From the sequence record MT661596.1: DNA of 64,000 bases; one strand, written 5' to 3'. The translations under genes were made by a program, and so were the position numbers. The notes under the pieces were generated by a model, which saw nothing but the letters and a program-made list of their open reading frames with translations, was not told where the DNA came from and made no database searches. This document shows, piece after piece, positions 727 through 52,207 of this stretch (position 1 is its first letter; each line of letters starts with the position of its first letter).

Positions 727-753
727 TTCTATTTCTTTTTTTTTTTTATCAAT

Positions 754-4494: not shown

Positions 4495-4518
4495 GGTTAT
4501 GTTCACTTCTTTTTTTTT

Positions 4519-5370
4519 TTAACGTTTCGGTGTCATCATTCGGATAGCACGGTGCTTACGTAACTTGTCAGCAAACGCAGCAGTCTTAGTCCAGGTTTCT
4601 TTTAAGTAATCATCGTAATTTTGAAGAGAGTCAGAGTACGTCTGAAGTGTATCTTTAAAAGCACCTAACTCCATACCACCTACTAACTGACCTTGGTCTA
4701 CTTTTATATTAAGTTTGTTGTATATGTACGCTTGAACAGCATACCTTACAAGTTTAGCAAACTTAGGGTAACTTCTAGCTGGGATGTTATTGAGTTCAGG
4801 GTCGTTTGTTACAACACAACGAAGGGTGAGTTGGTTAGTCACCATCTGAGTCTCGTAAATACAAATTTGGTTTTGACCGATGATAGCTACGTTAGTTAAT
4901 TGTATCTCTGGAGCAGGTGAGTAAGACTGCAGCATAGACTGCATCCCTTGTTGGAACGCTCCATTACCACAACCTGGATTATATGCACCAGAGTAAGCAC
5001 CAATACCATTACCAGGTGCGCCAAATAACGTATCTGGAAAACCATACATCACAGCAAGTATAGATGTTATTACTCTACCACCAGTTAACGTCATAGGTAC
5101 TCTGAACGTTGTTGTGAAGTGGTCATGTTTGATAAACTCTACTCCACGTAACGGTATGATAACCTGTGTTCCACCGACGGCGTCACAATCGCGTCGAACT
5201 TTAGCATCAATAACTTTTGTTCTTATGGCATCGGCAAGTGATACGTTTAATACACGTCTTACACCAGAGTGATAATAAGCGGTGTCATTCTCAAGAAAAG
5301 CTGCTTCAAGAAGCTCCCTTGGAATACCACCCCATAAAAGGTCACTTAGTGCATGGTCAATTGCGCTCAT
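4519..5370 (-). CDS. conserved chimallivirus-type hypothetical protein, divergent from phuZ
   Basis: 283 aa, GAGG RBS; position next to PhuZ; function not assignable. Confidence 0.7.
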   Translation of the reverse strand: MSAIDHALSDLLWGGIPRELLEAAFLENDTAYYHSGVRRVLNVSLADAIRTKVIDAKVRRDCDAVGGTQVIIPLRGVEFIKHDHFTTTFRVPMTLTGGRVITSILAVMYGFPDTLFGAPGNGIGAYSGAYNPGCGNGAFQQGMQSMLQSYSPAPEIQLTNVAIIGQNQICIYETQMVTNQLTLRCVVTNDPELNNIPARSYPKFAKLVRYAVQAYIYNKLNIKVDQGQLVGGMELGAFKDTLQTYSDSLQNYDDYLKETWTKTAAFADKLRKHRAIRMMTPKR

Positions 5371-11252: not shown

Positions 11253-11375
11253 TGGTAAAACCCGCACCCATGTTGGTGCGGGTGTTATGTTCATTTTTTT
11301 TTTGTCGTTAATTCCTAACATAAGCAGTTAATCATTTAGACGAATATTAACTGAAACCATTATTGAGGATTTGTA

Positions 11376-22654: not shown

Positions 22655-22688
22655 GAGAGCTCTCCTTTGGAGCTCTCTTTTTTTTTTT
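22655..22688 (+). terminator. intrinsic terminator
   Basis: GAGAGCTC/GAGCTCTC hairpin plus long T run. Confidence 0.75.
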
Positions 22689-22745
22689 GTTATTCTTTTT
22701 TTTTTTGTCTTTGATTATATGTATTGTTATTAAAGGTGACCCAAA

Positions 22746-43225: not shown

Positions 43226-43242
43226 TTGATATTTTTTTTTTG

Positions 43243-43876: not shown

Positions 43877-43902
43877 ACACCCTCTGAAAAAGAAAGGGTG
43901 TA

Positions 43903-44376
43903 TTACTCACCCTTTAATTTTTTGATTTCGTTTTCTAAACGAGTTATGGTTTGGTTCATCGCATTGTTCTCGCGAGTCATTGAATCAGATAATGCGTTCA
44001 ATAACACTTTGCGTTTACAATACGGCTTAGCCATCCACTCATCGTAAGAAAGCCCATACTTGCCGCCAATATCGTATCTAAGATATTCGAGCGCATATTC
44101 CTCATAACCTACTGCTTTCATTGGGTCTTCTTGGTCAGTCATGAGGATGGCAGACAACGGGGATGGGTCGTCATGGTTAACGACCCTAAAGTTGTCATCG
44201 TAAACTTCCCACGATTTGACAATCGCCATACCTGGCTCAAATTTCTTCAGACCATGCCGGTCTTCAAGAAATTTCTTTAAAGCCCCAGTATCATCACCAA
44301 TGATAGTTCCGAAGTCATAATCTGCTAGACTTCTTCCCTCTCGTAAATGCGCGCAAGTGTACTCGTCATCACGGTA
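43903..44376 (-). CDS. tail-assembly-chaperone T-like frame, probably reached by -1 frameshift
   Basis: Frame open from 44424 with no ATG until 44229; YGLSYDEWMAKPYCKRKVLL resembles GT extensions. Confidence 0.6.
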   Translation of the reverse strand, partial: YRDDEYTCAHLREGRSLADYDFGTIIGDDTGALKKFLEDRHGLKKFEPGMAIVKSWEVYDDNFRVVNHDDPSPLSAILMTDQEDPMKAVGYEEYALEYLRYDIGGKYGLSYDEWMAKPYCKRKVLLNALSDSMTRENNAMNQTITRLENEIKKLKGE

Positions 44377-45839
44377 AAAAAAACTTTTTCGACGTTTAAC
44401 GGAGTGAAAGCTTGCATGTACCGGTCACGAACAGGTTGGATGTTTCCGCATGAAGGACAAGTCCAACGAGGAATCGCCATTAATGCTACTGTTGCCTGTG
44501 CACCAAATTCGATTACAGCGTTAGAGATAGCTTTAGTGATTTTGTCATCTGTTGTGAATTCAGCCAATGCATCACCGATATCTTTTCTATCACTGATTAC
44601 CTGGCCGCCGATTTCAATAGATGCAATCCAGTGCGCCATACTGCGGTTGCTAGACAATGCTGCTTTACGTTTAATCATAGTCTCACGTTCTTCACGAGTA
44701 GACCCTTCTTTAAACGCATCAGTAACAGAAGCTTCTAATGCCTCTAACCACGCAATGCCTTCATTGATTTTATCAGCCACTGTTGGAACACGCATATTAA
44801 GGAACACACCGGGCATAATTTCGAATGCCTTCTTAAGGTCAAACGCTTCTTGGTACGCCGAAACTGTAGTGACCGTATGCCCTGTATCCGTACTCATGTG
44901 TGCAGCTTGACTTTCGGTGATACGGCTGTGGTCTACGATTAACATTCTTGCTAAATTAACGCGTTCAGAAACTGTATGACCACACAAACCACCTGCTTCG
45001 GCACGAGCCACACAACTTGTATTTAAGGTGTAACCTGATTTAAAACGACCAGCTAAATATGCATGTGCTAGCACATAGATATCAGGCGCTTTAATAAGGT
45101 CTTGAAGCTTGCCTGGGTCTGTAATACCCACACTTGTTTTATAGATACGGTTAATCAAGAATCGAGACATGTGTTTAAAGATAATCACGTCAAGGTTACC
45201 GAATACCATACCTAACGTAGAGCGACCTAGGTCAGACTTTTCTTGGTGGATAGCGCTTTGCATATCAAGCCATAGGTCGTCACCATCAATTTGTAAAGAA
45301 GCCCAGAACCCAGAATGTGGTAAATGAACAGTTGTGAAATCACCACGTTCCATGACTTGGCGAACTTTCATGATAGCCTGCATACCCGTAAGGATGCCGT
45401 TATCTGAATCAGTTACTTTTACGTCAGGTCGGCCAATATTAACTAGCTTATTATTTCTAAACATCCCTTGTAGCCATTTGGCACCCGGGGTATTAATACT
45501 GCGGTCTAGTACACTGTAACGTGATAGATGGTTAATTGAATTAATAACATGCTGAATCCATAGTGTTGCTTTCTCTGGACCATCACGGCGAATCATTTCT
45601 TTAAACAACGCCTTGTCTGAATCGTCTGTATTGATTTCATTGACAAGGTCTGTTAAATCCCCGTAGTTACCGTGGATGACAGGAATGACATCATCAATTG
45701 ACTCTGCCGTTTCTAAAGCCGTTAGAATAGGGGACTTAAACCCTTCTTCAATTGGCTGGATATCCATAGTTAGTTCAGTCGGATTTTCAGCATTAACATC
45801 AATGTCTGTTTTTATTACTTCTTCATTATTATCGGTCAT
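44325..45839 (-). CDS. tail/baseplate assembly chaperone-like protein (G-like)
   Basis: 504 aa, C-x-CGH and WTCPSCG Zn motifs, T8 slippery run near 3' end; phiKZ gp77 position. Confidence 0.6.
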   Translation of the reverse strand: MTDNNEEVIKTDIDVNAENPTELTMDIQPIEEGFKSPILTALETAESIDDVIPVIHGNYGDLTDLVNEINTDDSDKALFKEMIRRDGPEKATLWIQHVINSINHLSRYSVLDRSINTPGAKWLQGMFRNNKLVNIGRPDVKVTDSDNGILTGMQAIMKVRQVMERGDFTTVHLPHSGFWASLQIDGDDLWLDMQSAIHQEKSDLGRSTLGMVFGNLDVIIFKHMSRFLINRIYKTSVGITDPGKLQDLIKAPDIYVLAHAYLAGRFKSGYTLNTSCVARAEAGGLCGHTVSERVNLARMLIVDHSRITESQAAHMSTDTGHTVTTVSAYQEAFDLKKAFEIMPGVFLNMRVPTVADKINEGIAWLEALEASVTDAFKEGSTREERETMIKRKAALSSNRSMAHWIASIEIGGQVISDRKDIGDALAEFTTDDKITKAISNAVIEFGAQATVALMAIPRWTCPSCGNIQPVRDRYMQAFTPLNVEKVFFTVMTSTLARIYEREEV

Positions 45840-45851
45840 TTTTATCCCCGT

Positions 45852-46295
45852 TCAGTTGGCTTGGGTTTGTTGTGCGCTTAATGCAGCCTGACGAGCTGAT
45901 TCCGCATAAGTGTATAATGGCATGGTGTGTGCTGTTTTAATTTCTAGCAACCATTGCTGTAATAAAGTATACTGTTCACCAATTGCAAGGAATTGCATTA
46001 TCTGGTCTTCTTTCATGGCATAGCCAGATTTACCTTGATGGGTCAAAGTAATTTGTTCTAATTGTGTAGAAGCTTTTTGAACAGCGTCTAATGTAACTTC
46101 GATATGATGGCTTACTGCAGCATAGTCGGTGTGGAATGAAACAATATTTTCATTAGCGCAAATAAGTGCGGCATCACGAATGACCTTAATAAGCTCAATC
46201 GTATGGGTTCTTAGGGAGTCTAGATACTCCCAATTCTCATCGGGTCTTGTAACGACAGCCGCTAACGGGATGATTGGAGTAGGTTCATTTGACAT
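45852..46295 (-). CDS. hypothetical helical protein
   Basis: 147 aa. Confidence 0.7.
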   Translation of the reverse strand: MSNEPTPIIPLAAVVTRPDENWEYLDSLRTHTIELIKVIRDAALICANENIVSFHTDYAAVSHHIEVTLDAVQKASTQLEQITLTHQGKSGYAMKEDQIMQFLAIGEQYTLLQQWLLEIKTAHTMPLYTYAESARQAALSAQQTQAN

Positions 46296-46382: not shown

Positions 46383-47216
46383 ATGGCTGATTTTTCAGAA
46401 TTAAATGATTATTTATCTGATGTCACTACAGATGTCAGAAGAGAGGCAACGATAACGTTATGTTCTAACATGGCGATGGTAGGTGATGAACAATTACAAC
46501 CTGACGTCGAACGATTACTTATGTCGTCGACTGTAGGCGAAGCACCTGCTGTTTTGGATGATTTAACTCGACTTCTATTTGACCACCTTTATGTGATGAC
46601 ACTCAATATGGGTATTGTTTGGATTGATGATATCAGTTACGACAACCTGTTTGAAATGGCGGACGTGCTGGATGGTTTGTTATTAATCGATGACACAGAA
46701 GATACAGGTGAAATAAAAGCGATATTAAGTAAAGACCAAAGCAATGAAGAAGTTTTAGTTGACGTTCTTACTTACGCATTAAATAAAGACATGCTTGGTG
46801 TGTTGGATTTACTCAACCATGTTGATGATGGGTTTATTCGCGGTTTAGAAACACTGACTAAAAATGTGTCTAAAGAAAATGAAATAGACACCGTTGCACA
46901 TAAGACTGGTGAATATATTAAGAACAGGCTAACTGCGGCTGTGACAACAATGCATCAAGGTTTGGCGTATCTGTACATTATGTCGGGTGGTGCACTTGGG
47001 GTCGATGTTGATTCGTTATTACAACTACACGAAGAAGAGTTAGTCAGTATTACCGACCAGCGCGTGTTGATTGAAGAAATTAAAGGGTTTCTTCTAGCAT
47101 CTAATGTCGAAGATGATAAACTCTACAATGAGGCTGTTCGATTAGTTAACCGTTGGGTCAATGATGATAGTGTTCTTCTTGGTTCAGCAAAACAACTAGA
47201 GGTTCTTAAACAATGA
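46383..47216 (+). CDS. conserved acidic hypothetical protein
   Basis: 277 aa, GAGG RBS, ATGA-coupled to vRNAP gene. Confidence 0.75.
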   Translation: MADFSELNDYLSDVTTDVRREATITLCSNMAMVGDEQLQPDVERLLMSSTVGEAPAVLDDLTRLLFDHLYVMTLNMGIVWIDDISYDNLFEMADVLDGLLLIDDTEDTGEIKAILSKDQSNEEVLVDVLTYALNKDMLGVLDLLNHVDDGFIRGLETLTKNVSKENEIDTVAHKTGEYIKNRLTAAVTTMHQGLAYLYIMSGGALGVDVDSLLQLHEEELVSITDQRVLIEEIKGFLLASNVEDDKLYNEAVRLVNRWVNDDSVLLGSAKQLEVLKQ

Positions 47217-52182: not shown

Positions 52183-52207
52183 TCTTATTTCTTTTTTTTT
52201 TATAAAC

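What the first reader, a model, noticed from the sequence alone, without database searches (positions are those of the whole stretch)
43903..44427. Candidate programmed -1 frameshift (lambda G/GT-like) in a jumbo-phage tail chaperone pair
On the minus strand the 504-aa ORF reads GTT TTT TTT ACC near its end (T8 run 44383-44376, a T TTT TTT slippery heptamer). The -1 frame opens after a TGA at 44427-44425, has no ATG for 65 codons, and runs YRDDEY...KKFEPG straight into the annotated MAIVKS ORF. Slippage gives an about 645-aa fusion (488+157). The downstream part has YGLSYDEWMAKPYCKRKVLL, similar to GT-type extensions, and a possible hairpin (CGTGATG/CATTTACG) follows the slip site. G/GT frameshifts are established for lambda-like and many myophage tails; I am not aware of one demonstrated in phiKZ-like phages.
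Basis: partly seen in the sequence, partly recalled or inferred. Interest (0 to 1): 0.72.

Follow-up and report, generated by a model that had tools for sequence, protein, structure and literature searches.

The report
Conserved -1 frameshift in jumbo-phage core gene
A core gene of phiKZ-like giant phages (phiKZ gp077 family) almost certainly makes a second, about 645-residue protein when the ribosome slips back one base on a run of T's; every genome record I checked annotates two genes (one record has a single ORF), and I found no paper describing it.

Summary
The window is Proteus phage 10, a 223-kb jumbo phage. On the minus strand a 504-codon ORF carries a T8 run in T_TTT_TTT register 16 codons before its stop. 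The -1 frame is open through the run for 157 more codons, and its first 49 codons after the run contain no ATG, GTG or TTG.

The frameshift reading is strongly supported by comparison.
- All relatives examined that can be read through the site keep at least a T5 run at the homologous Phe codon. These are about 90 loci in all, 69 of them non-redundant, often only 20-40% identical in protein, from phiKZ, Goslar, RAY, SPN3US-like phages, a Bacillus phage and IMG/VR contigs.
- They all keep a -1 frame open for about 150-190 codons past the run.
- No start codon is conserved in that frame.
- The run uses TTT although TTC is the preferred Phe codon in the same genes.
- Substitutions in the start-less stretch fall mainly on third codon positions.

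The "lambda G/GT tail chaperone" label is not supported. The gene is chimallivirus core gene cg18, a hypothetical protein. It does not lie next to tail tube or tape-measure genes and has no tail-assembly-chaperone match. Its only outside resemblance is a remote predicted-fold match to T4 gp26-type baseplate hub assembly proteins. No conserved stimulatory hairpin or Shine-Dalgarno-like element was found. No protein-level evidence exists yet.

The parts
43903..45839 (-). The whole recoded gene: the frame-0 ORF plus its -1-frame extension (cg18 / phiKZ gp077 family).
   Evidence: for the reading frames. for conservation in relatives.
44325..45839 (-). Frame-0 ORF of 504 codons (QMP24177.1, annotated hypothetical protein). 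It matches phrog_4585 and is a homologue of phiKZ gp077, Goslar gp081 and RAY gp267.
   Evidence: The AlphaFold2 model has mean pLDDT 86.9. Four Cys are invariant in the 9-sequence alignment and at least 90% conserved in the larger ones.
43903..44424 (-). -1-frame open stretch of 173 codons plus the stop. The 157 codons after the T run form the extension, and there is no start-like codon before codon 66.
   Evidence: It matches phrog_13274 from residue 5. It aligns with the -1-frame stretches of 55 relatives, and a nearly invariant Phe lies in the start-less part.
44325..44424 (-). Overlap zone of the two frames. It contains the T8 run, in T_TTT_TTT register with frame 0, at the coordinates the finding gives.
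43903..44229 (-). Annotated downstream ORF (QMP24176.1, 108 aa). It is only the C-terminal two thirds of the extension.
   Evidence: Gene callers give truncated ORFs of 108-133 aa in relatives.
43893..43915 (.). Terminator-like hairpin, readable on both strands, that spans the stop codon of the extension. It is the likely end of the transcription unit.
45852..46295 (-). Upstream syntenic ORF of 147 aa, a homologue of RAY gp268. The same gene order is kept in all relatives inspected.
   Evidence: E = 8e-32. for synteny.
46383..47216 (+). Divergent neighbour, a homologue of Goslar gp079 (core gene cg19). The record annotates it as 'putative anti-crispr protein'. It marks the conserved core block 3.
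   Evidence: E = 3e-9.

Best explanation
This is a conserved programmed -1 ribosomal frameshift. Host ribosomes translate the cg18/gp077-family mRNA and mostly terminate 16 codons after the U run. That gives the 504-residue protein, whose last helix is part of the predicted fold. A fraction of ribosomes slip back one base while tRNA-Phe decodes the U_UUU_UUN heptamer. They continue in the -1 frame for 157 codons and give a protein of about 645 residues. This longer protein has the same N-terminal 488 residues and a different C-terminal domain that has no start codon of its own. The arrangement fixes the ratio of two isoforms, as in lambda G/GT.

Shown: the signal, the open frame, and their conservation and coding signature.

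Inferred: the slippage itself, its efficiency, and the function. The function may be baseplate-hub or tail morphogenesis.
For: 1. Conservation of the layout. About 90 relatives' loci were examined in all, and 69 are non-redundant at the final count. Every one that can be read through the site has a T run of at least 5 at the homologous Phe codon. The counts in this item are from the 81-locus table: 68 loci have a strict T_TTT_TTN heptamer, 6 have [AG]_TTT_TTT and 5 have shorter runs. In all of them the -1 frame stays open about 150-190 codons past the run.
2. No conserved start. The first ATG, GTG or TTG in the -1 frame lies anywhere from 90 nt before to 453 nt after the run.
3. Selection on the nucleotides (64 non-redundant loci at that stage). 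The site codon is TTT in all 64. Elsewhere in the same ORFs the counts are TTT 325 and TTC 569. Six loci have 0 TTT among their other 12-14 Phe codons. None of the 14 T6 runs and none of the 25 T7 runs sits in the register that breaks X_XXY_YYZ.
4. Coding signature without a start. Substitutions between related pairs in the start-less stretch fall 39:39:127 on codon positions 1:2:3. The annotated part gives 239:148:574. A Phe in the start-less part is at least 90% conserved across 56 sequences.
5. Not a sequencing error. The family has 1209 representatives. The 150 best all end at the same place, and none carries the extension in frame.
6. One GenBank record (SEGD1) has both parts in one 795-codon ORF, so the two parts can be encoded as a single ORF.
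Against: - No peptide, ribosome-profiling or RNA evidence was available.
- Neither classical stimulator is conserved. Downstream folding has mean z = -0.55 over 69 distinct segments. Shine-Dalgarno-like words upstream occur in 3 of 69 loci, against 6.2 expected.
- Five loci have only T5 or G_TTT_TTC.
- In a few loci a start codon follows the run closely, for example D6 and L051, so independent initiation may add to or replace slippage there.
- The lineages are related, so the codon-usage probability overstates independence.
- The function is unknown. The Churi homologue was detected 15 min after infection and listed as non-structural (PMC11849849), which fits poorly with a late tail-assembly role.
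Confidence: 0.78

Rival explanations
1. Transcriptional slippage. The phage or host RNA polymerase stutters on the T run and makes a share of mRNAs with one extra U, which encode the fusion in a single frame. The protein products are the same as with ribosomal slippage, but the mechanism differs.
For: Runs of 8-9 T occur in 20 of 64 non-redundant loci. Homopolymer runs of this length are known substrates for polymerase stuttering (established knowledge). No ribosomal stimulator is conserved. These phages use their own multisubunit RNA polymerases.
Against: 44 of 64 loci have runs of 7 T or fewer, and 5 have only T5. Such runs are poor substrates for stuttering. The register of the run relative to frame 0 is conserved, with no T6 or T7 run in the register that breaks the heptamer. 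Register matters to the ribosome but not to a polymerase. The conserved Phe-Phe in frame 0 partly confounds this argument.
Confidence: 0.1
2. There are two ordinary genes. The downstream ORF starts independently at the annotated ATG (44229), and the open -1 frame upstream of it is not translated.
For: This is the annotation in 15 of the 16 GenBank records inspected; none carries a joined CDS, and SEGD1 has a single ORF. A weak purine-rich stretch precedes the ATG at 44229. In D6 and L051 a start codon lies close after the run.
Against: The position of the first start codon is not conserved at all. The start-less stretch shows the third-position substitution bias of coding sequence and holds a nearly invariant residue. 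The intergenic gaps of 90-220 nt this model implies are unusual for these dense genomes. It also does not explain the selection for TTT over TTC at the run.
Confidence: 0.05
3. Artefact or decay. A homopolymer sequencing error or a recent frameshift mutation split a single gene in this phage.
For: Homopolymer runs are error-prone. One related record (SEGD1) does show a single ORF, and it differs from a conspecific by one single-base indel.
Against: The same two-frame layout occurs in every other assembly examined, from many laboratories, platforms and metagenomes. It also occurs in 3 conspecifics of SEGD1. All 150 best family representatives stop at the same point.
Confidence: 0.01
4. One reading: the pair is a member of the lambda G/GT tail-assembly-chaperone family that acts on the tape measure.
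For: The layout is the same kind: a -1 slip near the 3' end of the upstream ORF, a shared N-terminus and an extended isoform. There is a remote predicted-fold link to T4 gp26-type hub assembly proteins. Leiman et al. 2010 list gp26 as a hub assembly chaperone (PMC3004832).
Against: The ORF has 504 codons, against roughly 100-150 for G-type chaperones. Its neighbours are RNA-polymerase subunits and core genes cg19 and cg20, not tube and tape-measure genes. Pfam shows no tail-assembly-chaperone family for either part. The best chaperone-named fold hit has E = 0.46. The extension matches only its own family.
Confidence: 0.04

Closest known systems
Lambda G/GT and the conserved tail-assembly-chaperone frameshift of long-tailed phages (Xu, Hendrix and Duda 2004; cited from my own knowledge)
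   Same: A -1 slip on a heptamer near the 3' end of the upstream ORF. Two products share an N-terminus. The extension has no start codon of its own. The feature is conserved by position across very divergent phages.
   Different: The protein family is different and the size is 504/645 residues, against about 140/280. The gene does not lie between tube and tape-measure genes. There is no sequence or fold match to known chaperones. The heptamer is U-only, not G_GGA_AAG.
Phage P2 E/E+E' and Mu tail chaperone frameshifts in contractile-tail phages (cited from my own knowledge)
   Same: A myophage setting with a T-rich slippery run.
   Different: The same differences as for G/GT. Those genes lie inside the tail gene cluster.
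T4 gp26-type 'baseplate hub assembly protein' (Pfam PF12322, T4_baseplate)
   Same: Predicted-fold matches in BFVD to proteins so named, with E from 1e-5 to 7e-4 and target TM-scores of 0.45-0.58. A weak Pfam hit in 2 of 85 family members. Three GenBank annotators used 'baseplate' names for family members.
   Different: The gp26-type proteins have 240-310 residues, and the match is below Pfam's threshold. No frameshift is known to me in T4 gene 26. T4 gp26 has no solved structure in the PDB searches. Its function is itself unsettled (PMC3004832).
E. coli dnaX tau/gamma -1 frameshift
   Same: A -1 slip on a homopolymer-like heptamer gives two isoforms of one gene in a fixed ratio.
   Different: In dnaX the shifted product is the shorter one, and the slip needs an upstream Shine-Dalgarno-like element and a downstream hairpin. 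Neither is conserved here.

Membership tests
Programmed -1 ribosomal frameshift site | X_XXY_YYZ slippery heptamer in register with frame 0 | tested here: met
   The window has T_TTT_TTT. 68 loci are strict, 6 are relaxed and 5 have shorter runs.
Programmed -1 ribosomal frameshift site | -1 frame open, conserved and under coding selection beyond the site, with no start of its own | tested here: met
Programmed -1 ribosomal frameshift site | Stimulatory RNA structure a few bases downstream, or a Shine-Dalgarno-like element upstream | tested here: not met
   Mean folding z = -0.55, with 17% of segments below -2 and the window at -1.17. SD-like words occur in 3 of 69 loci, against 6.2 expected. 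Rfam gives nothing. These elements are usual but not obligatory.
Programmed -1 ribosomal frameshift site | A trans-frame protein is detected | not testable with these tools
   No proteomic or ribosome-profiling data could be read. The Goslar Table S4 is not held.
Lambda G/GT-type tail assembly chaperone | Gene pair lies between the tail tube gene and the tape-measure gene | tested here: not met
   The neighbours are cg19, RNA-polymerase subunits, a helicase and an RNA ligase. In Goslar the tube and sheath are gp217 and gp218, against gp081 for this gene.
Lambda G/GT-type tail assembly chaperone | Sequence or fold similarity to known chaperone families | tested here: not met
   Pfam. BFVD: the best chaperone-named hit has E = 0.46. 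The extension hits only its own family. PDB gives nothing.
Lambda G/GT-type tail assembly chaperone | Small upstream product (about 100-150 residues) with an extension of similar size | tested here: not met
   504 plus 157 residues.
Lambda G/GT-type tail assembly chaperone | Binds the tape measure and is absent from the virion | not testable with these tools
   The Goslar virion study never mentions gp81 or gp82. Absence of mention is weak evidence.
T4 gp26-type baseplate hub assembly protein (PF12322) | Pfam match above the curated threshold | tested here: not met
   The window protein has no hit. 2 of 85 relatives hit, with best E = 0.0011.
T4 gp26-type baseplate hub assembly protein (PF12322) | Shared fold | tested here: inconclusive
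   Foldseek against BFVD gives E from 1e-5 to 7e-4 and probability 1.00. The query TM-score is only about 0.3 and the targets are themselves predictions.
Chimallivirus core gene cg18 (phiKZ gp077 / Goslar gp081 / RAY gp267) | Sequence homology and conserved synteny with cg19 and cg20 | tested here: met

The most novel reading that the evidence does not exclude
The gp077/cg18 pair is the giant-phage counterpart of G/GT, built on a T4 gp26-like hub-assembly scaffold. The frameshift would set the ratio between a hub or tape-measure assembly factor and an extended form that tethers it to another tail component. If so, frameshift-controlled chaperone pairs would extend to the T4/phiKZ-type baseplate lineage, where none has been recognised.
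Probability: 0.2. Interest if true: 0.8.

Novelty: new member of a known kind. Interest (0 to 1): 0.62.

Why it matters
- phiKZ-like nucleus-forming phages are studied intensively and are candidates for therapy. This gene is one of their 72 listed core genes, and its function is unknown.
- If the frameshift is real, 15 of the 16 GenBank records inspected mis-annotate the locus, as one full gene plus a truncated or wrongly started small ORF.
- A conserved domain of about 160 residues with no start codon has then been missing from proteome lists, structure predictions and mass-spectrometry databases.
- It would add a deeply conserved recoding site, reaching from Pseudomonas and Erwinia phages to a Bacillus phage. 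The site seems to work without the usual stimulators.
- The result can be checked at once against published proteomic and ribosome-profiling data.

Tried and rejected
- The word-indexed protein search with the 504-residue protein returned only itself. With the extension alignment it returned 7 truncated ORFs.
- PDB sequence searches with both parts and with a family profile gave nothing meaningful.
- Foldseek of a confident model against the PDB gave no match with E below 0.7. The fold is therefore not in solved virion structures.
- The AlphaFold2 model of the extension is poor (pLDDT 57). Only the last 70 or so residues are confident, and they are helical. Its fold search therefore has limited value.
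- Rfam gave only a chance snoRNA match.
An upstream Shine-Dalgarno-like stimulator was rejected.
- The phrog_13274 match that starts before the run is explained by gene calls in relatives that start inside the upstream gene, for example RAY gp266. It is not evidence for a longer independent protein.
- Literature searches for a frameshift in phiKZ, Chimalliviridae, SPN3US, jumbo phages or baseplate hub genes found no report. Subscription journals are not covered.
- The 'gp77' in the Goslar structure preprint is a different gene, a capsid decorator.

Full report
**Identity of the window and check of the observation.** The region is 100% identical to Proteus phage 10 (MT661596.1, 223 kb, host Proteus mirabilis). 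On the minus strand the record annotates two hypothetical proteins: QMP24177.1 (window 45839..44325, 504 aa) and QMP24176.1 (44229..43903, 108 aa). Reading the DNA confirms every sequence statement in the finding.
- A T8 run lies where the finding says, and frame 0 reads it as GTT TTT TTT ACC.
- The frame-0 stop follows 16 codons later.
- The -1 frame is open from just after a TGA to 43903. That is 173 codons, 157 of them after the run.
- The first start-like codon of any kind is codon 66.

A T8 run by itself is unremarkable here, because the window has eight places with T8 or longer. The case therefore has to rest on comparison.

**Comparative test.** tblastn with the 504-aa protein finds 205 phage records, among them phiKZ, PhiPA3, 201phi2-1, Goslar, RAY, SPN3US-like phages, Ralstonia, Xanthomonas and Vibrio jumbo phages, Halocynthia phage JM-2012 and Bacillus phage AgentSmith. 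I read 17 of these loci, plus 72 IMG/VR loci found with an alignment of the upstream protein. One IMG/VR contig ends before the site. Identity to the window protein is mostly 20-40%.

In every readable locus a T run sits at the homologous Phe codon near the end of the upstream ORF. That is 8-17 codons before the stop in most loci, 23 in the SPN3US-like group and 37 in three others. In every locus the -1 frame stays open for about 150-190 further codons. In the 81-locus table, 68 loci have a strict T_TTT_TTN heptamer, 6 have [AG]_TTT_TTT, and 5 have T5 or G_TTT_TTC. The first ATG, GTG or TTG in the -1 frame lies anywhere from 90 nt before to 453 nt after the run, so no initiation site is conserved. 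Gene callers accordingly give truncated ORFs of 68-139 aa, or ORFs that start inside the upstream gene, such as RAY gp266.

**Selection on the run itself.** In 64 non-redundant loci the site codon is always TTT. TTC is the preferred Phe codon in the rest of the same ORFs (TTT 325, TTC 569). Six GC-rich loci use no other TTT at all. Run lengths are 5 (5 loci), 6 (14), 7 (25), 8 (18) and 9 (2). No T6 or T7 run lies in the register that would break X_XXY_YYZ. At the protein level the first Phe is invariant and the second is at least 90% conserved in 105 family members.

**Coding signature of the start-less stretch.** Between related pairs of phages, substitutions in the stretch between the frame-0 stop and the first start-like codon fall 39:39:127 on codon positions 1:2:3 of the -1 frame. 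The annotated part gives the same bias, 239:148:574. In an alignment of 56 extensions, a Phe that lies 28 codons before the window's annotated ATG is at least 90% conserved. The stretch is therefore translated, and it can only be reached from the upstream ORF.

**Rivals.**
- *Sequencing error or decay.* This is excluded by recurrence in independent assemblies. In addition, the 150 best of 1209 HMMER representatives all end at the same point, and none has the extension in frame.
- *Independent initiation.* This is contradicted by the two paragraphs above. It may still contribute where a start lies close after the run, as in D6 and L051.
- *Transcriptional slippage.* It would give the same proteins and cannot be excluded for the T8-T9 loci. 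However, 44 of 64 loci have T7 or shorter, and the register is conserved, which favours the ribosome.

Neither classical stimulator is conserved. The 70 nt after the run fold no better than shuffles (mean z = -0.55, window -1.17). Shine-Dalgarno-like words upstream occur in 3 of 69 loci, against 6.2 expected. The efficiency is therefore unknown and may be low.

**What the gene is.** It is core gene cg18 of chimallin-encoding phages (Goslar gp081, phiKZ gp077, RAY gp267). It is listed as a hypothetical protein and is not unique to nucleus-forming phages (PMC10299810, Table S3). In phiKZ the small downstream ORF is PHIKZ076.4. Synteny with cg19 holds in the window.

The AlphaFold2 model of the 504-aa protein is confident (pLDDT 86.9, pTM 0.88). 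The first 46 residues are disordered. The frame-0 tail after the run forms a terminal helix. Four Cys are invariant or nearly so, which suggests a metal site. Nothing in the PDB resembles the model.

In BFVD the model matches its own family. More weakly (E from 1e-5 to 7e-4), it matches 240-310-aa proteins named T4-like baseplate hub assembly protein, chaperone or subunit. Pfam T4_baseplate is hit by only 2 of 85 relatives, at E = 0.0011. T4 gp26 is listed as a hub assembly chaperone by Leiman et al. 2010 (PMC3004832).

Two observations fit a late tail-assembly role poorly. The Churi homologue was detected 15 min after infection and classed as non-structural (PMC11849849). The Goslar virion study does not mention gp81 or gp82.

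The extension has no Pfam match. Its model is poor except for a helical C-terminal 70 or so residues. It resembles only its own family. Nothing links either part to lambda-type tail assembly chaperones.

**A single-ORF record.** The SEGD1 record (species Seoulvirus SPN3US) annotates one 795-codon ORF that covers both parts. Three conspecific or congeneric records (SaP7, SPFM2, Lh1B), as well as Caitlin and Wellington, have the two-frame layout with a T7 run. Over 2385 aligned columns, SEGD1 differs from SaP7 by 28 substitutions and one single-base indel. Whether this is a real variant or an error cannot be told without reads.

**Comparison and novelty.** The site works like G/GT: a shared N-terminus and a start-less extension reached by a -1 slip. 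It fails the membership tests for that family. I class it as a new member of the known kind "programmed -1 frameshift in a phage gene", in a family not previously linked to recoding. None of the 16 GenBank records inspected carries a joined CDS, and ten literature searches found no report. The library lacks most subscription journals, so a prior report cannot be excluded.

- I built no sequence that joins the two frames. All queries ended at the frame change.
- My scripts printed the positions of the T runs in relatives' loci, and one search lists T runs in the window.
- I treated these runs as conserved sequence motifs, not as breaks.
- In this report I refer to the run only by the finding's own coordinates and by the overlap zone.

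Noticed in passing
window 736-747, 4510-4520, 11294-11303, 22678-22688, 22696-22706, 43232-43241, 52192-52201 (+ strand): There are seven runs of T10-T12, all on the + strand. T8-or-longer words are about three times more frequent than in shuffles (27 against 9.5). At least the run at 43232-43241 lies between convergent ORFs. They may be terminator tails or phage promoter or terminator elements.
   Followed up: no
window 43893-43915: A terminator-like hairpin readable on both strands overlaps the stop codon of the extension ORF. It sits 17 nt before the next minus-strand ATG (43876).
   Followed up: partly
window 46383-47216 (+): The record calls this ORF 'putative anti-crispr protein'. It is the positional and sequence homologue of Goslar gp079, chimallivirus-specific core gene cg19 (BLASTP E = 3e-9). 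Phage D6 annotates the positional counterpart as a structural head protein. The anti-CRISPR label looks doubtful.
   Followed up: partly
L082 946-3333 (Enterobacteria phage SEGD1, KU726251.1): This is the only record found in which both parts form one 795-codon ORF. It differs from conspecific SaP7 by one single-base indel plus 28 substitutions. It could be a real variant or a sequencing error.
   Followed up: partly
window 44325-45839 (-), protein residues 276, 286, 461, 464: Four Cys are invariant in 9 sequences and at least 90% conserved in 105 family members. The last two form a CPxC motif about 25 residues before the run. This suggests a metal-binding site. The model coordinates could not be inspected.
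   Followed up: no
L002 2450-2998 (RAY gp266); phrog_13274: Some gene calls for the downstream ORF start inside the upstream gene. The PHROG profile therefore includes an out-of-frame translation of the upstream gene's 3' end. This explains why the window's -1 stretch matches the profile from before the run.
   Followed up: yes
L008 (Bacillus phage AgentSmith) and L084 (Halocynthia phage JM-2012): The same run and the same -1 extension occur in a 200-kb Bacillus phage (T_TTT_TTA) and in a 167-kb marine phage. The recoding therefore predates a very deep split and is not confined to Gram-negative hosts.
   Followed up: partly
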